A DNA stretch of 63,835 nt, the filler included, from Bigelowiella natans CCMP2755 (lineage: Eukaryota; Protista; Cercozoa), in the NCBI GenBank assembly GCA_000320545.1. It is 9 parts of 9 records of this genome, joined end to end, with 100 filler letters (N's around TTAATTAATTAA, not from the genome) between each part and the next. Parts side by side here need not be neighbours in the genome. Positions count along the whole stretch, not along the records: positions 1 to 16,740 come from ADNK01002161.1; 8 more parts are not named here. One strand, written 5' to 3'. Of this stretch, positions 3,792 to 16,740 are shown piece after piece. Every line of letters begins with the position of its first letter. The first letter of the stretch is position 1. Under the pieces are notes generated by a model. It ran no database searches and was not told the origin of the DNA. It worked only from the letters and a program-made list of their open reading frames with translations. Position numbers and translations under genes: made by a program.

Positions 3792-4479
3792 AAGAAGGTG
3801 GAATACACCATTCAAAGCATAGAATCATGCCCTACTCCTCGTAGCTGGTTTGGGTGAGCAGATGGAACATAATCATGAAATGATATTAACACGAGGCATA
3901 CTAGCAGCGCTCCAATCATTTTAATTCGTAGCGATGTGTTATAGCTGATAGCATCGAATGTTTCTAGATTTATGTGCACAAGCTAAGCTAGCTAAGCGCG
4001 ACAGCAGGAGCACAAAGCTAGCCCCATGCCATGCTCATTGACTTGATTGCATTGTGCCATCTAGCCATGCGATCGGCACGAGCTGCTGCCACGAATCGAA
4101 AGTACTAGCATTGCTGACATTGCGCATCTCTGGCATGATGGCTTCATCATGATCAGCTAGCTAGCTAGCGCACATGTTATAATGTAGCACAATGCATGCT
4201 AGCTAGCGATGTGTCCACCCCTGCCTCATGCTAGCATGTGCACATTGCATTGCACGCGTGCACTTATCTGTCCACCGTCTCCTTCCCAGACGGGCAGCGT
4301 AGCAGCTGCCCTCTAATCTGCCCAACTCCAACCCATGAACCCTTGCCTCCCGCCTTCCCACATGTGCACCATGCACAAGCCATCACACTGACCTTGGACA
4401 GCTTGTTTTCCTTTGTGTTGAGTCTGTCAGGTTCGTCATCGTGACCACCATCATCATCATCATCGTCGTCAGGTTGTTT

Positions 4480-5007
4480 CCTTCAAAGACAGCGATTGCG
4501 AACTTCAAGCTTCGGTTTTGAAGTTTCCATTTCATCGGGATGGCTGTGGTCTCCTTGCATCCTAGCTTCCTCTCCCGTGGGAGGTCGTGCACCCAACGCT
4601 CGTTCCAATTCTTTGATGAACATTTGCAAGTGTGGCATGTCTCTGGCGAACACAAGGATTCTGTTCTCGATGCACTTTTGCTCCGGTTGGAGCTCTCCAT
4701 CAACAGCGTGTTGCCAAGAACGTCCATCGCCTCAAACTACACTTGCCTTCTCATCCAATTAGACACTTGACAATCTCCAGATGACCTTCTTTGAAACTCT
4801 GAATTGACCTCCTCGACATTTGCCTTCTCACCAACCAGACACTTGACAATCTCCAGCATGACCTTCAGTGCGGAACTCAAAATCAACGGCGTGGAACCGC
4901 AACGGTCCTTCCTCGATGTTTGCCCTTTGCTCAGTTGAACGCTTCAGATGAAGAAGGTTGTCATCACGTGCTACTTTGAACATTGCTGCTTCGAAGATGT
5001 TAGACAT
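4480..5007 (-). pseudogene. Degenerate ankyrin-repeat gene fragment (frameshifts and a stop), inside a TpA-erased domain
   Basis: Two similar ~47-bp units (4743-4789, 4820-4866) translate on the - strand as (E)GHLEIVKCL(I/V), the ankyrin GHLEIVKYL motif with Y read as C. Upstream reads MSNIFEAA...LKRSTEQRANIE. The frame is broken. Confidence 0.6.
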
Positions 5008-7090: not shown

Positions 7091-9244
7091 ACCATTGTAA
7101 CAAATGCTCCTATGGTTCTACCACTAGAATAAATATTTTCGTCTTTCCAACAAATTGTGACCATGGATATTTTTAACTGCGATGCGGCGGCTTGAGATCG
7201 CAAGATGGGACAAAATTTCGGATGTTTTGATTTTGTTGCTTTGGTTTATGAGCGATATAGGCGGTGAGAGTTCCTCATTTCGTTGTCACGTTGTGGCATG
7301 GCGTTATACAGGGCGCCATTTGTTTGTTCACGCGCTCATGCCTCTCATCGAGTACATGCTGTTTGGTGGATTCTGTGTGCTGCGTGGCCAGGATGGAGAT
7401 AACAGATCCACCGAATCCTGTCAGTTTCCATCCTAGCGAATTGCTCGTCTCACCAATCACCTTGCACGCATATACGTCTTTGTGGACGCGTCAGAATCAT
7501 TTGAGAACAATCATGCATCGTGATTTTCTTGTTTTTGCACACGCACACACACACACACACACACACACTGTAGACATGTACTGTGTCCATTGTGCACACA
7601 CACACACACACACACACACACCACGCACACCACGCACACATGCACATTGTGCACATGCACATGTGCACGGCAGGCAACGCACATTGCAGGTGAACACAGT
7701 GTGCCTGTGTTGATGTGGACAAAGAACAAAGTGTGCATGCAAGCACAACAACATCTCAGCGGCCAGCTGTGTGCATTTTGCACTTGCGCACACGCACAAT
7801 GCGCACCATGCCATGTTCATTGCAGCGTGTCATTGATTTTGCGTGCATTGCCACAAATTGTCTGATGATGTGGCGCATGCATGCAGCTAGCACGCGTGTG
7901 CTTGCATGCATGCAATCCACTGAACAATCTGGCATGCAAGTGTCACCTTTCCACGGCATCCATCACATCAAACTGACAAACACGAAAGTCTCTCTACCTA
8001 GTCGTCTTGACACTCCGAAGGTGCAATGTTCACTAATGACACCTCCTTTGCAGTTGAAGTGATCTTGTGTGGACTGCATCCAATCGGCGTTTGTCCAAAC
8101 TCCACAGCAAACTCAGTGCAATCGGTCGCAGTTGTGTCTTCTGTGCGGCCCCAGAGCACTTGATCCTGTTTGAGAATGCTGATCGTCAGAAACACACATT
8201 TCATTTTGGAAAAACAAAAAGAGTTTTTTTGGGTTCCACATTCCAACGCCATCCTTTTCGATTTCTGTGCCAGGCTTCACGACCAATTTTTTGTCAGAGC
8301 CTTGCGGTGCTCCTTCGGATGCTGAAGGCTAAGACCTGAAGGACCTTCCTACAGTTTGAACCAAGTTTGCAGTTAGGATGGAAGTTAGGACACTCCCCCT
8401 TCACAGCAAGGATGTGTGTGGGCCCACGCCTGCAGCGGCTCACGTCTTGGTTGCGTTGGACGACGTGGAGGTCCTCGGCTGTTGCGAAAGAGAAAGAACG
8501 GCGTACGGAGGATTCTATGAAGAAGTCCTGGGTTTCGTACATGCGACAATGATCCAGCCTCATCTTTATCCCTGGAAAACAGGTTCATGTATCTCGAGGG
8601 AGCGCGTGGAGTTTCCGCATCTTCGACACCAACCGGCACTAAAGTAAATTCGCTTTCTTTTGTACATTTCACCTAAAGATAACCAGCGGCATGAAAGGGC
8701 ACACTCTTTTAGTCCTCTTGTGGGAATGGGTTATCAGATGTTCAGGATTAAATTTCCATCAATTTTACACCTATTTCTTTATGGGCGTCTTTAAAAATGC
8801 ACTCAAAATTACTAATAATCACATTGAAATTAAACATTTTCACCAGTTTCAGATATGCACTGATTCTTTAACTTGGGGGTGTTTCTGTAGAGTATTTCCA
8901 GATTTATCTTCTTTAATATAGCCTAAGTAATCAAGTAAATCCGATCTCTTTATTAGTATTTTGGGATAAATGTGCAAAATCAATCATGAAATGGGGGGAA
9001 AAGTCTTTTGTTTTCGACATTTTTCAAATCTGATTACAGATTTACAGTAAGGGGGTGCTACTGTGAAGTTGGGCCTGAACGGATGATATTCGAACGCTGT
9101 TTGGCACCTAAACATAGGAGATTTCGCTTTGAGATGGCGGGCATAGGTTGTCTTAGTAGCATAAACGCCTTCCATTTTCGTTGCCTAAAGAGTGTGACTG
9201 CACAAGAGCGGAGATAGTTTTTTCACATCCCATTTGCTCGCATC

Positions 9245-10285: not shown

Positions 10286-11560
10286 GTAGGTCTGGCTAAC
10301 AACTGTGGTTGTTAAAGAACCTAAGCGCGTGCTGCAAATTCGAATTTCTTATTTAACACGAAAAACGCCATTGCGGCGCGCATCCTTAATCAGTGCAACG
10401 TGACATCTTGCCTGCAGCATTCGCGCACAAACAACTCAGCATAGCATTCAACATAGTCTTGTTAGATCGCATGAGTACGCCGATGAACTTGCTTTGGGCC
10501 CACTGAAAAGAGGCGTCACATGCGACGCGCTCTGCTACGTTCAAGCAAGCCTGGCTAGCTGGGTAGCATGTCCAGATCTAGAGATGGTGTAGATCATCGT
10601 CTGCTGGCATCAGCAGCTAGCTAGAGCCACAGAGCGTCAGTGCGTGCATGCTGGCACAAATGTTTCCAGCATCGCATGCTAGCTAGAGATGCTAGGATGG
10701 CCTGCTACTAGCTAGCTAGCTCTAGCTAAGCTAGATCTAGAGATGTTACTAGACTAGCAGGACATGCTGTGGCTAGCTAGCTAGCAGCTAGCTTGGTTGT
10801 CCACTTTGGAGACAAGAACCACGCGCCGCGAGTTGCTGAACCCACGTGTGAAGGCTGCAAACGCGCTTCGTTGCGCAATTGCGATCACGATCGCCACACG
10901 TGCGTCGAAAGCAAATCAAAACTCCCACGCAAACGCGAGCTCAGATTGCAATGTGTGTGAATGTGAAAACCATCTCGTGAAACATGACATGAAGAATGTG
11001 CGAAGTGCAATGACAACGGCGATGTTCTCTTCACAAAGCGGAAACGTGTGCACGCCACATGCGGTCATGCCATGTGTTCCATCTGAGCAAAGTTGTGCGC
11101 ATGGCGTCGAGTGCCGAATGTGATTTGCATCATGTCAGAACAAACAGCATTTGCAGCGTTCCACACTCGACATTGCAAGGCACAAATGATGCCTTTTCAT
11201 GCCAATTCAGCCGCGTCAATGATGTGTTGCGAACACACCAGTGCATTCGCAACGTTCAGCCGAGAACAGCGACATGCATGCGTCTCATCAATCTCCAGAT
11301 GGGCTCACAAGGTCATGAGAGAATGCCACAAAATGAACACGTCTCCATGTGTGTGACTCATCCAATCAATCACAAAAACTGCCATCATCATCATCACCAG
11401 AAGACAACATGAAAATGTCATCTCCACTGCTGTCATCCATTCCAACATCAGTGTTGGCACAAGGGTCGGCGTGCATGGGTTTCGGTGCTTTGTCCAATCT
11501 CCTTGATTTGCGTGTTGGAACCTGATGGAAAAGACAGTTGATGTGTGAAAGTGAGCTGAT

Positions 11561-13604
11561 TCATGCATGCAACGTCACCGAGCTAGTGTGTGCATCTCGT
11601 GAAGTGTGTTCTTGGAGTCTTTGCCTTCTTGTTGCGTTGTGAACAATGCGCAAATCTGCGCCAATTGATGCTGAGCTTGTTTCATCATCATCTTCATCGT
11701 GTTGCATCGCATCTTCAATTGAACTTGGTTCGTCGCTGTCATCGTGTTTGTGTTCACTCGTGTGGTCTGTGCTGGAACTGTCTGATTCACACTCGGGGTG
11801 ATGCCTAGCCATGTTGCTTCGAAACCATTCTGGGCCAGAGTGAATCAGCTCAATGATTTGTTTCTCGAAAGAAGCGATGTGATGCTTGATGCGGGTTTTG
11901 TCCATGCAATTGGATTGTTGGTTGAGTTTTGTTTTGCACATGTCAACATTGTTTGCAGTTGAACAGCATTTGTTGCAAGTGCATTTCACGTCATCGTCGT
12001 GCGATGATTTGTCTTTCACAACTTGAACAAGGTGTTTGATTCGCTCCATGAACCAATTGGATGTCTTTTGCAAGTTCGGAGTGTTGTTTCTGATTTCTGG
12101 TTGTTTCCGCTGAAGGTGTCCTTCTCCCATGGAAGTGCAAAATGTTTTGGTGCTGTTCCACATTGTTTTCATGATCTTGAAATGTTCATTTGCATGTTTG
12201 ATGTCTTCAGAATGGGTGTCCCGAATCACTTTGCGACCACAAATTGACAACATGGATTCACCAGGCTCTTCATTGCCATGATTTGGACTTTTGCTGAAGT
12301 TCAACCAGAAATCAGTGGAGGCATTTCGGTGCATCTCAAGAACAATGTGGTTCATGCATGTGTTCCTTCCACATTGCCTGTGTCCAAAATTGGCAAAAGC
12401 TGCCATGACACTTTTGTGCAAACTGAAAAGCATTTGAAAGTCGTCGACTTTCAAAGCGATCGTGCAATCGTGTAGCAACGGTGTGCAAAACCGAAGCAAA
12501 GAGCACCAAGAATCCAGTTCTTCCCTCTCTGGGATGTGTTGTCGATGAACGCTGCAAGCTGGACACTTGTCAAACGATTCTTTGTTGTCAATGTTCCAGT
12601 TGGCATCCAAAATCTCGTCTGTTTCACATTTTTCACCAGAGCATGTCACTCTCAAGAGTGAAAAAAAGCACACAATGTGCGCGATGTGCTTTGGTTTCGA
12701 TTTCCATTTCTGCCCAGGGTGCAGTTTTGCAAATGATGGCATGAAAATGTCTTCATGGCTTCTCCATGCGAGCATGGAAAGAAATTTGCAAGAGTGCCAC
12801 CATCCTAGAACAGGCACAATCAGGTTCCTCACATCCAAAATGCATGAACTTTTTGACCAAAATGCCTGAGCAATGACACACAAGGTTGCGAATGTGCCAG
12901 CACATTCGCAACAAAGCAGAACATTGCAAATGACCTTCAAAATCCTTTCACAAATGGCTGCATCCGAAACCACCGTGATCATGCAATTTTGTGGAATGTT
13001 CTGTTTGCACAAGCTCAATGAAATCTTGAACAGTCCTTCATTTGCCGAGACGTTGTGTTCGTTCATCTCGTGAGGTTGCACACGTGATGGAGCGTCGACC
13101 CGGTTTTTCACGGCCTTGATGTGTGCGTTCCTTTTCTTTTCATCTGCCACACATCTCATCACAGCATCCACTGTCACTTTGATGGGCACATGCCTGATGT
13201 CCCATTTCAAACACAAAGCAACACCGGACAAATTGAACTCAGCTTCGTCGATGAAACGCATGAACCAATTGGATTTGTCACTGAACAATGAGGTGACATC
13301 ACATTGAGGATGTCCCTTCTCAATGTGCCAACATGGTTTCTTGACAAAAGGACAGATTGCACTCGGATGCTTCTTGACAGCCACTGCACACCATTGACAG
13401 TTTTTGTGCACATTGTTTCCTCTTGGTGTTTGAACTGCCAACGCTTTCCCGCAATCATCAATCCACATCAAGCTCAGTTTTGATTCTCTGATTTCCACAT
13501 CATTCTCAATGCGGAGTTGTTTGCATCTCCTTGAGAATGAAGATTTTCCACCACCAATCCCAATCTTGGACAAAAGTTTTGCACCATTCAATGATGAACC
13601 TCTG
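11561..13604 (-). mobile_element. Academ/DUF6589-like DDE transposase gene, hypermutated (no Tyr) and 5'-truncated by a copia insertion; probable in-frame 69-nt intron at 12866-12934
   Basis: Motif order WIDD(C), VVSDAAI(C), PVLGWWHS(C)K, D(C)TIALKVDDFQMLF..K..MAAFANFGHRQ(C)GR, NEEPGE resembles Academ/DUF6589 transposases as I recall them (not searched). The frame stays open to the LTR junction and meets TGA at 13607-13609 inside the LTR. Confidence 0.6.
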
Positions 13605-14020
13605 TGTCAGCGGTCTGGCCGCGCCACCCACGATCAAGGAGCTGTCGCAGCATGCGCACGTCCACTCGTGCTGCACGCTGCGCTGCGCACATGCGCATGG
13701 AAGTTCTCAGAACTTCGGGAATCTTCGAGAAGCTTCGAGAATCTTCCAGAAGCTTCGAGAACATTCCGGAAGATTCGAGAATCTTCCAGAATCTTCGAGA
13801 GCATTCCGGAAGCTTCGAGAATCTTCCAGAGAATTCGAGAGAATTCTGGAAGATTCGAGAATCTTCGCGAATGCGCCGGAACCCAATGCGCACATGCATG
13901 CAGCGCAAGTCACAAGTCATCAACACAATTCAAACGCACACAGGACCGCGTGTTGACACTCAGTGACATCAGCACAGTCCCGCGCACAAAAGCTAAGCAG
14001 CTACCGCAAGCCCGCTAAAA
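13605..14020 (+). mobile_element. 5' LTR (~416 bp) of a Ty1/copia retrotransposon
   Basis: Starts TGTCAGCGG (13605) and ends CCGCTAAAA (14012-14020), an imperfect terminal inverted repeat. It is followed directly by a PBS and the gag-pol ORF. Confidence 0.8.
13719..13871. promoter_or_regulatory. Tandem heat-shock element array (nGAAnnTTCn) within the LTR
   Basis: 15 in-phase decamers plus a final GAA; 12 match GAAnnTTCnn exactly and 3 begin GAG (e.g. GAATCTTCGA GAAGCTTCGA GAATCTTCCA). Confidence 0.8.
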
Positions 14021-14031
14021 GGTTATGAGCC
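14021..14031 (+). promoter_or_regulatory. Primer-binding site GGTTATGAGCC (Ty5/copia-type, initiator-Met half-tRNA primer)
   Basis: Abuts the LTR 3' end and matches the PBS type complementary to the tRNA-iMet anticodon arm used by Ty5/copia-like elements. Confidence 0.8.
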
Positions 14032-14190
14032 TCAAGAGGACTTGCAAAAGAACCAAGCAAACCCCCCACCCCCCCCCTTCAGCTACATCCTTCCAGAAGA
14101 AGGAACTGAAAGCGACAACAGCATTCCCTCAGCCAATCTTCGGTCAAGCCTCCAAAGCACTGAAAACAAAGAAAACAGGAACGAAACAAC

Positions 14191-16740
14191 ATGTCAGAAA
14201 AGCAGATAGACTCCCTGCTGAAAAACTTCACCCTCAAGTACGATGGTAGCAACTACAAGCCCTACATGTACAAGCTAATGTCTGCCTTTGAAGCAGCGGA
14301 TTTGGAATCATGCTTCAATGTCAACATAGAAATAGAAGGAAAGGTGACAGAAGTCAATGTACGCACCGACCCCGCTCACCGACGAGAAGTACTCAAGCTA
14401 TCCCCGGAGCAATTCGATATCCTCAATCCCAAACCTGAAGGAAGAGGATCACAAGAAAAGATAAACAAAAGAAAGAGAGGAAGATTCTTCCTCACTGCTA
14501 CCCTTCCTGATAAATTCTTCGATCTACTCGAAGGAAAACCCAAAGACGTAGCAGTTACCTTAGCAGCCTTGCTGGAGAAGTACGAGCCTACCAATCCTGT
14601 AGCCGTCAGGAAACTTTATTCGAAACTAAGTGATATAAACATGGGTCAGTACAATGGAGACTTCACAAAGTATCATTCTGACCTTGACTCGACGATCAGA
14701 AGACTTCGGGCACAGCACGAAGGGTACTCCGACAACCAAGCGCTTGCCACTCTACTTCGAGGACTTGTACCTAGCGAAAAATACGAGACTATAGTTACAG
14801 TCATCAACAACAAGAAAGATGTTACCTTCGACTCTGCAGTGGACATGATCCGCTCCCACATAAACTCCCGATCATTAGATGACGGGCAGAGACCTTCAAA
14901 GAAACATGCAGGACACACCAGTGCAGAACACAAATACGTGAAGATGTACGATGGCTTGGAGAAAAGGCTAAACGAACTTACAGGTCAGCTGAAGACCTAC
15001 AAGAGGAAATTCAAAAAGGGAAAGAACAGATACAACAGCGAAGCATATCAAGACAATTCCAAGAAGCAAAAGAGAGAAGACTATTTCTTGAACTTAAAGA
15101 AAAGAACAAAATGCCATTACTGTGGCAAGAAAGGACATTGGGAAAAGGAATGCAGAAACAAGATGAGAGATGAAGGCAAGCAGAACAAAGGAAAACACTA
15201 TTCTTTTATTGATCATGGCTCCCCTTCCCAAAGACCCTCTTACATTAATAAGATGGCACGCGACAATTCTTACCTGCAAACGCTGAAGTACAACCATAAG
15301 CCTTTGATCCTTCTCGACAGCGGAGCCAACAACCACTTCTTCTGCGACCGCGACTTCTTCAACGAGTTGAAACCTATTCAACCACGATACATAGAAGTTG
15401 GCAAAGATGGGACAGGATTCTTTGTGAATTATGCAGGCGACGTCAAACTAACTACAAAAAACAAGCAAGGAAAGATGCACAAAATTGTTCTACAAGGAGC
15501 TTTGTACTCTGAAGAAGCTGCAGGCAATGTGATTTCTCTAAACAGACTAGTTAAGAGTGGCAGCGAGTACAAAGGAACAAAACAAGGAATAAGCATTACC
15601 GCCAACGGAGAGGAATACGCGTTCGGGGACTTTCAAGACGACGGCCTATTTTATTTGAGATATAAACAAATAAACAAAAGTACAAAAACACAAAGATTTA
15701 AATCCTACCCAATGAAACAGCCATCTTCAATCAAGCACGCACATAACATCCTAGGGCACATCGCAGCGGATAAGATAAGAGACACCTATGCAGTTACAGA
15801 AGGTTTACCTTATTCCAAGACGATAAAAATACCAAAGAAGATCTTTTGCAAGGCCTGTGATGTAGCCAAAACAAAAAGATCTCCGATCTTTGATCCAAGC
15901 GCCCAAGAAAGGATGAAACAGCATCGGAATAAAGCAAAGATTGAGGACGATGCTGTCAAAAAGAAGCAAAAATGTGTACCTGATATCCACAAGAAAAACC
16001 GGATGTGGAATAGAATTCACTCTGATGTAAAGACCATGCCTAACAGCATGGATGGTTACAAGTATTTCGTAATATTCGTACATGAAGGAACAAGGTGGGT
16101 TACCTTGGAGCTCTTGAGAAAGAAAAGCGAAGTTACGCAGAAAACCATACAGTTCATAAAGCACATCAGAAAGCTTCCAGGTTGTGGAAGCATAGACGAA
16201 TTCAGATCGGATGGTGGAGGTGAATATATGAGCGCAAAGCTACATAGCTGGCTCACCTCCGAAGGAATAAAATGGGTTCCTAGCACCGCCCGAACACCTG
16301 AGCAAAATGGAATGTCCGAGCGTCACATACAGACTATCATGGCGAAAACAAGAGCTATGTTAGAACATGCACGCTTACCGGTCGGATACTGGTCCTACGC
16401 AGCTCAGACTGCAGCATATCTCCACAACGTCACCTCACATCGCAGCACACCTGGTAGAAAAACGCCTAAAGAACTACTGCACCATGAGCAACCAAATCTA
16501 AAGAATCTAACTACCTGGGGATGCATCGGAGTAAACCACATTGACAAGGAACTCCGACCTGCAGGTGGTATGGGTGCTAGAGGTGAATACGTACGTATGT
16601 TGGGATATGACGATAGATTTGGTACTTTTCTCGTCGCCACGAAGACGCTGAAAATTAAAAGAGTCCGTGTAACTAAATGGTACCACACAGTGTATAAGTT
16701 TCCTTCGCTGAAGAGAAACAAAGTTAGTGATTCGGCTTTG
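14191..16740 (+). mobile_element. Ty1/copia gag-pol polyprotein (gag, zinc knuckle, protease, integrase); RT, RNase H and 3' LTR lost at the assembly gap
   Basis: Uninterrupted ORF with CHYCGKKGHWEKEC knuckle, LLDSGANNHF protease, HNILGH..CKAC, integrase IHSDV / FRSDGGGEY / PEQNGMSER, and MLGYD. Integrase directly follows protease, which is copia order. Confidence 0.95.

What the first reader, a model, noticed from the sequence alone, without database searches (positions are those of the whole stretch)
11561..13604. 676-aa transposase-like ORF with zero tyrosines; expected Tyr positions read as Cys or His
Seen: no Y in 676 codons and a conspicuous excess of C and H. TAY->TGY (Cys) or CAY (His) is exactly what TpA->TpG/CpA produces. 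Positions where I would expect Tyr in Academ/DUF6589-like proteins carry C (DAAIC, GWWHSCK, LHDCTIALK, GHRQCGR). The change also removes TAA/TAG and cannot turn a sense codon into a stop, so the mutated gene stays open, a probable intron (12866-12934, GT..CAG, 69 nt) reads through, and long spurious ORFs appear in other frames. Inference: inactivation is by missense saturation rather than nonsense, so such dead genes will be mis-annotated as intact proteins.
Basis: partly seen in the sequence, partly recalled or inferred. Interest (0 to 1): 0.85.

Follow-up and report, generated by a model that had tools for sequence, protein, structure and literature searches.

The report
Tyrosine-free dead transposon gene, TpA-hypermutated
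The tyrosine-free 676-codon reading frame is a dead, truncated copy of a repeated mobile-element gene in the alga Bigelowiella natans whose TpA dinucleotides were almost all mutated to TpG or CpA, a process (and this gene's TpA depletion) already reported in a 2026 preprint.

Summary
ORF 11561-13591 (-) has 0 Tyr in 676 codons, with 5.6% Cys and 5.9% His. It lies in a 3.2-kb tract (10796-13993) holding 4 TpA where about 158 are expected.

The window is Bigelowiella natans nuclear DNA, and the ORF is JGI model 89796.
- At columns where unmutated homologues have Tyr, this copy has Cys or His.
- Among five paralogous copies, Cys/His is the commonest kind of variable column, and Arg (the double hit) and leftover Tyr share some of those columns.
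- Against a second DNA copy, 15 sites read TG in one copy and CA in the other.

Only TGA stops remain. A 69-nt intron, at a position where the Amorphochlora homologue has a spliced intron, is read through.

This copy is also cut short at its 5' end, and the gene model borrows a tandem array as its first exon.

The Academ/DUF6589 label is not supported. The family is an orphan, although one homologue lies in an element with terminal inverted repeats.

The TpA hypermutation, and this gene's presence in the low-TpA lists, are published (bioRxiv 10.64898/2026.01.13.699255). What is added here is small: the effect on protein composition, independent hits in paralogues, and survival of TpA only in TAG/CTA contexts.

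The parts
10796..13993 (.). TpA-free hypermutated tract (3,198 bp, 4 TpA)
   Evidence: TA observed/expected 0.02, CA 1.74, TG 1.69; about 158 TpA expected from the rest of the window. The left edge is sharp. The right 390 bp (13604-13993) has no TpA but little TG enrichment, so the true right edge is uncertain.
11561..13603 (-). Tyr-free ORF: a hypermutated, 5'-truncated copy of a repeated orphan gene (JGI Bigna1 model 89796)
   Evidence: 676 aa with 0 Tyr. 99% identical to P0004 and 73-94% to four paralogues. Homology to paralogues begins only at their residue 97 or 132. The stop codon is TGA.
12866..12934 (-). 69-nt intron-like segment (GT..CAG, phase 0) read through in frame
   Evidence: It adds 23 aa between the 'ILK' and 'AFWSK' motifs. 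The Amorphochlora homologue has a 56-nt GT..AG intron at the same point, and it is spliced out in the transcript-derived protein P0042. The metagenome homologues P0043 and L001 are also interrupted after the equivalent 'LK'/'IK'.
13683..13892 (.). Tandem array of 10/20-bp units with a (GAAnnTTC)n pattern; the JGI gene model uses it as its first coding exon
   Evidence: Tandem and palindromic repeats. The N-terminus of P0004 is the translation of this array.
10536..10795 (.). CTAG-rich stretch next to the tract; it may belong to the targeted region
   Evidence: 24 TpA, of which 19 are in CTAG, 2 in GTAG and 2 in CTAC. These are the same contexts in which TpA survives inside the tract.
4315..4972 (.). 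Second small tract with the same signature (tract A)
   Evidence: TA observed/expected 0.07, CA 1.51, TG 1.47. No Pfam hit for its ORFs.
7641..8330 (.). Third small tract with the same signature (tract B), just after a (CA)n microsatellite
   Evidence: TA observed/expected 0.09, CA 2.02, TG 1.92. No Pfam hit.
14191..16740 (+). Adjacent Copia-type gag-pol ORF, not hypermutated (internal control); it runs off the piece
   Evidence: Pfam hits to Retrotran_gag_2, Pol_BBD and rve. TA observed/expected 0.75 over 13994-16740, which includes this ORF; Tyr 4.8%, Cys 1.2% in the ORF.

Best explanation
[quoted passage not shown] A DNA-level hypermutation process has converted nearly every TpA in it to TpG or CpA, that is A->G on one strand or the other.

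Effects on the coding sequence:
- Tyr codons (TAY) became Cys (TGY), His (CAY) or, after a hit on both strands, Arg (CGY).
- Ile (ATA) became Met or Thr. Leu (TTA, CTA) became Ser or Pro.
- TpA spanning two codons gave Ile/Met->Val, Lys->Glu, Asn->Asp and Thr->Ala.
- TAA and TAG stops disappear or become TGA, and no sense codon can become a stop. The frame, including a 69-nt intron, therefore stays open, and gene finders call it a protein.

Each copy was hit independently after the copies separated.

Shown here: the mutation signature, its independence among copies, its effect on the protein, the truncation of this copy, and the chimeric gene model.

Shown by others: the same TpA->TpG/CpA mutations arise in real time in mutation-accumulation lines of this species.

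Inferred and untested: the chemistry is adenine deamination on DNA by an ADAT2-like enzyme, as the preprint proposes. What directs the process to this element and not to the neighbouring Copia element is unknown.
For: - Organism and locus: the best hits are JGI Bigna1 models, and P0004 (model 89796, scaffold 55) is 99% identical.
- DNA signature: 4 TpA in 3,198 bp with CA and TG at 1.7 times expectation. The non-coding 3' flank is depleted as well.
- Outgroup test: at 11 columns where unmutated homologues (Amorphochlora and metagenome sequences) mostly have Tyr, this copy has Cys 5 times, His 3 times and never Tyr. Where at least one outgroup has Tyr, 26 of 59 window residues are Cys or His.
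- Paralogue test: of 176 variable columns among five copies, C/H is the commonest type (16). There are also 4 C/H/R, 2 C/H/Y, 3 C/R and 3 H/R columns, and the sets M/T, I/T, L/S, L/P, A/V, M/V and I/V are frequent. Leftover Tyr is seen in P0003 and P0005.
- DNA test: against a second copy (L004, 527 bp, 88.6% identical), 15 columns read TG in one copy and CA in the other. That accounts for 30 of 56 substitutions. Four more columns pair TA with TG or CA, and all other adjacent double differences add up to 6.
- Signs that the gene is dead: the first ~96 residues present in paralogue P0001 (131 in P0005) are absent. The Asn of a W-x-D-N motif, present in all 14 family members that cover it, is Asp here. 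The conserved Tyr of the WHS[YF]K and DYG motifs is Cys.
- Published mechanism: 230 of 231 new mutations in two viral regions of B. natans lines were A->G or T->C, which the authors place on TpA. Model 89796 and its paralogues are in that preprint's lists of TpA-depleted genes.
Against: - No other genomic copy from B. natans itself could be fetched. So I could not test whether the edges of the tract coincide with the edges of the repeated element.
- The neighbouring Copia element is a repeat-type sequence and is untouched. Repetition or 'foreignness' alone therefore does not explain the targeting.
- The model name 'estExt' suggests that ESTs support the gene model, so the locus may be transcribed.
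- The enzyme has not been identified.
Confidence: 0.9

Rival explanations
1. The Tyr-free protein is functional, for example a domesticated gene, and its TA-free coding sequence is maintained by selection.
For: The frame is open for about 680 codons and is modelled as a gene with an 'estExt' tag. The candidate acidic residues (the Asp of W-x-D and D-x-N, and N-E-E-x-G-E) are still present.
Against: - Copies differ freely between Cys, His, Arg and Tyr at columns that are conserved Tyr in the family.
- The family-invariant Asn of W-x-D-N is lost in this copy.
- This copy lacks the N-terminal residues of its paralogues (96 of P0001, 131 of P0005) and has no ATG start.
- Non-coding flank DNA is equally free of TpA.
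- An open frame is no evidence of function here, because this mutation type cannot create stops.
Confidence: 0.03
2. The changes were made on RNA (ADAR-like A-to-I editing of double-stranded RNA, which favours a 5' U), and the edited RNA was copied back into the genome.
For: ADAR-type editing prefers UA and acts on repeat-derived double-stranded RNA. The preprint discusses the resemblance.
Against: - Both strands are hit about equally: 212 CA and 234 TG in the ORF, and 38 Cys against 40 His.
- All copies keep the intron-like 69 nt, so they are not copies of spliced mRNA.
- A homologue lies in an element with terminal inverted repeats, which is the DNA-transposon type.
- The published new mutations arise in single-copy, transcriptionally silent genomic DNA.
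Confidence: 0.03
3. TpA is avoided by ordinary compositional or codon bias, or by selection against a TA-targeting nuclease or TA-inserting transposons, and no mutator is involved.
For: TpA is mildly under-represented everywhere in the window, at 0.66-0.80 of expectation.
Against: - A ratio of 0.02 with sharp edges is not a bias.
- TG-versus-CA columns between copies, and C/H columns between paralogues, require an ancestral TpA that was resolved independently in each copy.
- Neighbouring genes and the Copia element have normal TpA.
Confidence: 0.02
4. Sequencing or assembly artefact, for example miscalls at a modified base.
For: None found.
Against: - The signature appears in the JGI reference assembly and in an independent metagenome contig, L004, where it resolves differently at individual sites.
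- The preprint observed the same mutations in Illumina data from separate lines.
Confidence: 0.01

Closest known systems
TpA->TpG/CpA hypermutation of integrated viral and other foreign sequences in Bigelowiella natans (Mettrop et al., bioRxiv 10.64898/2026.01.13.699255)
   Same: Same species, same dinucleotide target and same products. Model 89796 and its paralogues 70429, 84157, 147291 and 75421 are in that paper's Tables S6 and/or S8 of TpA-depleted genes.
   Different: The preprint measures new mutations in two integrated viral regions; it confirmed the giant-virus region as single-copy and says the virophage region resembles other virophage insertions. It treats other genes only as dinucleotide statistics. 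Its main text has no occurrence of 'tyrosine', 'stop codon', 'copies', 'context' or 'TAG'. Here the target is a dispersed multi-copy element that is saturated (98% of TpA gone).
Repeat-induced point mutation (RIP) of fungi
   Same: Dense dinucleotide-specific transitions confined to a sharply bounded repeated segment, hitting copies independently and leaving a dead gene.
   Different: The direction is opposite. RIP is C->T at CpA, makes TpA and many stop codons, and lowers GC. Here A->G at TpA destroys TpA, cannot make stops and raises GC. Dependence on duplication or on a sexual stage is untested, and the preprint's giant-virus (NCLDV) target is single-copy.
Deaminase hypermutation in animals (APOBEC3 on retroviral DNA; ADAR hyper-editing of double-stranded RNA)
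   Same: Clustered transitions in mobile or viral sequences. ADAR shares the preference for a U/T before the edited A.
   Different: APOBEC deaminates cytosine. ADAR acts on RNA and is restricted to animals (general knowledge). Here resident DNA is changed on both strands.
DUF6589 (PF20231) and Academ transposases
   Same: A large eukaryotic ORF that appears to be carried by a mobile element. One Amorphochlora homologue gives a weak DUF6589 alignment.
   Different: No member reaches the Pfam threshold. No Academ-specific feature was seen or could be tested.

Membership tests
B. natans TpA-hypermutated sequences (Mettrop et al. 2026) | Strong TpA depletion together with CpA+TpG enrichment over at least 3 consecutive 1-kb windows (their cut-offs: Rho TpA <= 0.43, Rho CpA+TpG >= 1.52) | tested here: met
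   The 1-kb windows 11001-14000 have TA 0.01-0.03, CA 1.63-2.02 and TG 1.42-1.76. The whole tract has 0.02 / 1.74 / 1.69.
B. natans TpA-hypermutated sequences (Mettrop et al. 2026) | Substitutions are A->G / T->C at TpA on both strands | tested here: met
   15 TG-versus-CA columns and 4 columns pairing TA with TG or CA, against copy L004. C/H/R/Y columns among paralogues.
B. natans TpA-hypermutated sequences (Mettrop et al. 2026) | The gene is listed by the authors as TpA-depleted | tested here: met
   jgi|Bigna1|89796 occurs in Table S6 (324 genes) and Table S8 (470 genes).
B. natans TpA-hypermutated sequences (Mettrop et al. 2026) | Foreign (viral or transposon) origin of the target | tested here: inconclusive
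   Multi-copy family. A 21-22%-identical homologue lies in an 8,286-bp element with 41-bp terminal inverted repeats and differing flanks. No relative was found in IMG/VR, and no terminal inverted repeats were found in this copy.
Fungal RIP | C->T at CpA (G->A at TpG), giving excess TpA | tested here: not met
   The opposite is seen: TpA is nearly absent and CpA/TpG are in excess.
Fungal RIP | Acts only on duplicated DNA, before meiosis | not testable with these tools
   The family is repeated, but the preprint reports hypermutation of a single-copy region in asexual lines.
DUF6589 (PF20231) | Pfam match at or above the gathering score (27 bits) | tested here: not met
   The window ORF gives no hit. 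Only P0006, one of 25 members, matches, at 15.1 bits and E 0.0098.
DDE-type (RNase H-fold) transposase, including Academ | RNase H-like catalytic fold with a conserved acidic triad | tested here: inconclusive
   The family conserves W-x-D-N, D-x-N-I-[FY]-x-R and N-E-E-x-G-E. However, the AlphaFold models are poor (mean pLDDT 63) and Foldseek against the PDB gave no match with E <= 0.001. A profile search of PDB sequences found nothing.
Academ superfamily | Academ-specific accessory domains and target-site duplications | not tested
   No reference sequences or models for Academ were available in the tools. No Pfam domain of any kind was detected.

The most novel reading that the evidence does not exclude
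TpA-directed A->G hypermutation is a defence against transposons that reaches beyond the laboratory strain.
- A family member only 26% identical, on seawater-metagenome contigs (L001, L002), is also nearly free of TpA.
- The process has a third-base rule. TpA survives only where it is part of TAG/CTA, above all in CTAG. This would reflect either the enzyme's specificity or protection by a modification.
- Related elements with terminal inverted repeats carry an adenine-methyltransferase-like gene, which could act as a counter-measure.
Probability: 0.2. Interest if true: 0.75.

Novelty: already known. Interest (0 to 1): 0.4.

Why it matters
A natural process that rewrites TpA to TpG or CpA in resident DNA is remarkable, but it has been described, and this gene is already on the published list. 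This locus adds three things.

1. It is a clean, saturated example in a dispersed repeat family. It shows that the copies were hit independently after they had spread.
2. It gives a simple protein-level diagnostic: no Tyr, excess Cys, His and Arg, and only TGA stops.
3. It carries a practical warning. This kind of mutation cannot create stop codons. Dead elements, and even their introns and neighbouring satellite arrays, therefore survive as long open frames and enter protein catalogues. JGI model 89796 and four paralogues are in EukProt. Such entries inflate orphan-gene counts and distort amino-acid statistics for this species.

The survival of TpA only in TAG/CTA contexts gives a testable clue to the specificity of the enzyme.

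Tried and rejected
- Fetching other B. natans genomic copies. Exact look-ups of P0001, P0002 and P0005 found nothing on record. A metagenome scan with the ORF found no relative. Only one 529-bp near-copy (L004) was obtained.
- Naming the family. Pfam was run on the ORF, on 10 homologues and on all 25 members of an alignment. PHROGs and NCBIfam gave nothing for the family. A profile against PDB sequences had 0 hits. Two AlphaFold models (mean pLDDT 63.4 and 63.3) with Foldseek against the PDB gave no match with E <= 0.001. Two further protein-database searches, with P0042 and with the family profile, returned only known members.
- Viral origin. No relative was found in IMG/VR with P0042 or P0043.
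- Terminal inverted repeats around this copy. None was convincing.
- RNA genes. No Rfam match and no tRNA in the piece.
- ORFs of the two smaller tracts. No Pfam hit.
- Rejected readings: codon bias, a functional Tyr-free protein, an RNA-editing retrocopy and a sequencing artefact (see the rival explanations).
Full report
**1. Observation**

The ORF listing gives a 676-aa ORF at 11561..13591 on the minus strand. Its translation has no Tyr, 38 Cys (5.6%) and 40 His (5.9%). Controls in the same window have normal composition:
- Copia gag-pol: 4.8% Tyr, 1.2% Cys, 3.6% His.
- Light-harvesting (LHC) gene: 2.9% Tyr.
- UbiA-like ORF: 2.7% Tyr.

At 2.8% Tyr, the chance of no Tyr in 676 residues is about 5e-9.

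**2. The cause is in the DNA**

Between 10789 and 13994 there are only four TpA dinucleotides. About 158 would be expected from the rest of the window. For 10796-13993 the observed/expected ratio is 0.02 for TA, 1.74 for CA and 1.69 for TG.

The 765 bp downstream of the ORF's stop have no TpA at all. In the ORF, TpA is missing within codons and across codon boundaries alike: 2 CTA codons and 2 boundary TpA remain. This is a property of the DNA tract, not of codon choice.

**3. Where the window comes from**

The neighbours are a UbiA-type prenyltransferase ORF, a chlorophyll a/b-binding protein gene and a Copia-type gag-pol. The ORF's best database hits are gene models of Bigelowiella natans in the JGI Bigna1 catalogue.

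P0004 (model 89796, 'estExt_fgenesh1_pg.C_550132', scaffold 55) is 99% identical to the ORF and is this locus. P0001, P0003, P0005 and P0002 are paralogues on other scaffolds, 73-94% identical. All five models are nearly free of Tyr, with 0-2 Tyr each.

**4.

(a) Outgroups. A full HMMER scan found 28 relatives. They include proteins of the chlorarachniophyte Amorphochlora amoebiformis and fragments from marine metagenomes. P0042, a transcript-derived Amorphochlora protein of 793 aa, has 2.8% Tyr.
- In an alignment of 5 B. natans copies and 10 outgroups, 11 columns have Tyr as the outgroup majority. There the window has Cys 5 times, His 3 times and never Tyr.
- Where at least one outgroup has Tyr, 26 of 59 window residues are Cys or His.

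(b) Paralogues. Among five copies, 176 of 635 gap-free columns vary.
- The commonest type is C/H (16 columns). That exchange needs two base changes unless both derive from TAY.
- There are also 4 C/H/R, 2 C/H/Y, 3 C/R and 3 H/R columns.
- The sets M/T, I/T, L/S, L/P and A/V (from NTA codons) and M/V, I/V, E/K, D/N and A/T (from TpA across codon boundaries) are also frequent.
- Leftover Tyr is visible in P0003 and P0005 exactly where other copies have Cys or His.

(c) DNA. The only second DNA copy I could obtain is a 529-bp metagenome contig, L004. It aligns to window 12468-12990 (-) at 88.6% identity.
- Of 56 substitutions, 30 lie in 15 columns where one copy has TG and the other CA.
- Four more columns pair TA with TG or CA.
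- All other adjacent double differences add up to 6.
- Discordance at 15 sites implies about 30 ancestral TpA in 527 bp, or about 6% of dinucleotides. That is the genome-wide TpA frequency given in the preprint.

Conversion is therefore nearly complete, and it happened independently in each copy after the copies separated.

**5. Consequences for the reading frame**

A->G or T->C at TpA can only make G or C, so no sense codon can become TAA, TAG or TGA. TAA becomes TGA or CAA. TAG becomes TGG or CAG. TGA itself cannot be changed.

In the tract the stop trinucleotides are 86 TGA, 4 TAG and 0 TAA on the plus strand, and the ORF ends in TGA. Stop density over six frames is 0.029, against 0.043 and 0.040 in the flanks. 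The effect on other frames is therefore modest; the longest other open stretches are 113-186 codons.

The segment 12934->12866 (-) begins with GT, ends with CAG and is 69 nt long. It adds 23 residues between two conserved motifs. In Amorphochlora a 56-nt GT..AG intron sits at exactly this point, in phase 0 after 'VLK', and it is absent from the transcript-derived protein. Two metagenome homologues are interrupted at the same place. I did not build or search an intron-removed (joined) version of the ORF. All searches used the frame as it stands, by reference.

**6. This copy is also broken in other ways**

tblastn shows that homology to the paralogues starts at their residue 97 (P0001) or 132 (P0005), at window position 13603. 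The N-terminal part is nowhere in the piece.

Upstream lies a 210-bp tandem array of 10/20-bp units with a (GAAnnTTC)n pattern. The JGI model takes its first ~105 residues from that array. The annotated protein is thus a chimera of satellite, hypermutated pseudogene and retained intron.

The Asn of a W-x-D-N motif, present in all 14 family members that cover it, is Asp in this copy only. That is a change at a TpA spanning two codons. The conserved Tyr of the WHS[YF]K and DYG motifs is Cys.

**7. What the gene was**

No Pfam, PHROGs or NCBIfam family matches the ORF or its unmutated homologues. The only hint is a sub-threshold DUF6589 hit for one Amorphochlora fragment: E 0.0098, 15 bits against a cut-off of 27. 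A family profile finds nothing among PDB sequences. Two AlphaFold models are of low confidence (mean pLDDT 63), and Foldseek finds nothing.

The family conserves W-x-D-N, D-x-N-I-[FY]-x-R, W-H-x-[YF]-K, D-Y-G..L-K-x-D-D-F and N-E-E-x-G-E. This is compatible with an acidic-triad nuclease but does not prove one.

The best evidence for mobility comes from the homologue P0043 (21-22% identical).
- It lies in an 8,286-bp unit bounded by 41-bp terminal inverted repeats.
- That unit recurs at 99.9% identity with different flanks in five metagenome contigs.
- The protein is recorded in 34 blocks of the contig collection.

'Transposon-borne gene' is therefore reasonable. 'Academ/DUF6589 transposase' has not been demonstrated. 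No relative was found in IMG/VR.

**8. Comparison with what is known**

A preprint (Mettrop et al., bioRxiv 10.64898/2026.01.13.699255, version of April 2026) reports a mutation-accumulation experiment in B. natans.
- Two integrated viral regions mutate about 1000 times faster than the rest of the genome.
- 230 of 231 changes there are A->G or T->C, which the authors state all fall on TpA.
- The authors list 324 TpA-poor genes and 124 genomic clusters with the signature.
- They propose adenine deamination by an ADAT2-like protein.

Model 89796 is in their Tables S6 and S8. So are 70429, 84157 and 147291, and 75421 is in S8. The process, and this gene's membership, are therefore already known.

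The main text has no occurrence of 'tyrosine', 'stop codon', 'copies', 'context' or 'TAG'. The protein-level corollary, the independent hits in paralogues and the points in section 9 are small additions. No other paper on such a process turned up.

**9. Additional observations**

(i) Context of surviving TpA. All 13 TpA left in the three tracts of this window and in L004 are part of TAG/CTA on at least one strand. Six are CTAG, five are GTAG/CTAC and two are TTAG/CTAA. In the unmutated parts of the window 37% of TpA are in such contexts (234 of 632), so the chance of 13 out of 13 is about 2e-6 (arithmetic mine).
- The 260 bp left of the tract hold 24 TpA, of which 19 are in CTAG. The targeted region may therefore extend to about 10536.
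- In the preprint's Table S2, my hand count gives 3 TAG among 91 A->G changes and 17 CTA among the T->C changes on scaffold 10. A G after the target A looks disfavoured but not excluded.

(ii) Two smaller tracts carry the same signature: 4315-4972 and 7641-8330, with TA at 0.07 and 0.09 of expectation.

(iii) The adjacent Copia gag-pol is untouched.

(iv) Metagenome contigs L001 and L002 encode a full-length relative only 26% identical. They are also strongly depleted, with TA 0.03-0.16 over the 3' half and CA/TG 1.3-1.9. A Tara contig, L010, is partly depleted, with TA 0.27-0.41. Their organisms are unknown.

(v) The Amorphochlora locus is not clearly depleted, with TA 0.4-0.6.

**10. Rival explanations**

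- A functional Tyr-free protein is contradicted by the free C/H/R/Y variation among copies, the lost invariant residues, the truncation and the equally depleted non-coding DNA.
- RNA editing followed by retro-copying is contradicted by the balanced hits on both strands, the retained intron and the published mutations in resident DNA.
- Compositional bias and artefact are contradicted by the comparisons between copies and by the independent assemblies.

**11. Limits**

- I could not obtain the other genomic copies from B. natans, so the relation between the edges of the tract and the edges of the element is open.
- The right edge of the tract is uncertain. Positions 13604-13993 have no TpA, but TG is not enriched there.
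- The idea that this stretch is the 5' LTR of the Copia element, which would have truncated the gene on insertion, is an inference I could not test. The piece ends inside the Copia element.
- Nothing in the window looked human, and no toxin, effector or animal, human or crop virus gene was involved.

Noticed in passing
window 11584, 11806, 12473, 12806; 4563, 4738, 4760; 7888, 7995, 7999, 8034; L004: All 13 TpA that survive in the hypermutated tracts are part of TAG/CTA on at least one strand (6 CTAG, 5 GTAG/CTAC, 2 TTAG/CTAA). The background share in the window is 37%. A G after the target adenine seems to protect it.
   Followed up: partly
window 10536-10795: A CTAG-rich low-complexity stretch lies directly left of the TpA-free tract: 24 TpA, of which 19 are in CTAG. 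It could be part of the targeted region that escaped because of its sequence context.
   Followed up: partly
window 4315-4972 and 7641-8330: Two further short tracts have TA at 0.07 and 0.09 of expectation and CA/TG at 1.5-2.0. Their ORFs have no Pfam match, and their origin is unknown.
   Followed up: partly
window 13683-13892: A 210-bp array of alternating GAA/TTC units, (GAAnnTTC)n. This is the pattern of a heat-shock element repeated about 16 times. It lies between the truncated ORF and the Copia gag and may be part of a Copia LTR. The JGI model translates it as an exon.
   Followed up: no
window 13994-16740: A Copia-type gag-pol with an open frame of 850+ codons, normal TpA (0.75) and 4.8% Tyr lies directly beside the saturated tract. 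The hypermutation therefore does not hit every repeat, or else this insertion is younger.
   Followed up: partly
L001:1825-4165, L002, L010: Seawater-metagenome contigs encoding distant family members (22-26% identical) also show strong or partial TpA depletion with CA/TG excess, and their proteins are poor in Tyr (P0010 0.5%, P0013 1.0%). The source organisms are unknown.
   Followed up: partly
L005:69-8354 (also L006-L009): An 8,286-bp element with 41-bp terminal inverted repeats carries the homologue P0043 and five other ORFs. It recurs at 99.9% identity with different flanks. One ORF (L005:535-1581, 348 aa) has weak matches to N6-adenine DNA methyltransferases (PHROG E 2.6e-7; NCBIfam CcrM E 1.1e-6, far below that model's cut-off).
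   Followed up: partly
preprint Table S2: In the published list of new mutations, four T->C changes on scaffold 10 have the contexts ATG or ATT, not NTA. TAG is much rarer among the A->G changes (3 of 91) than CTA is among the T->C changes (17). These are my hand counts.
   Followed up: no
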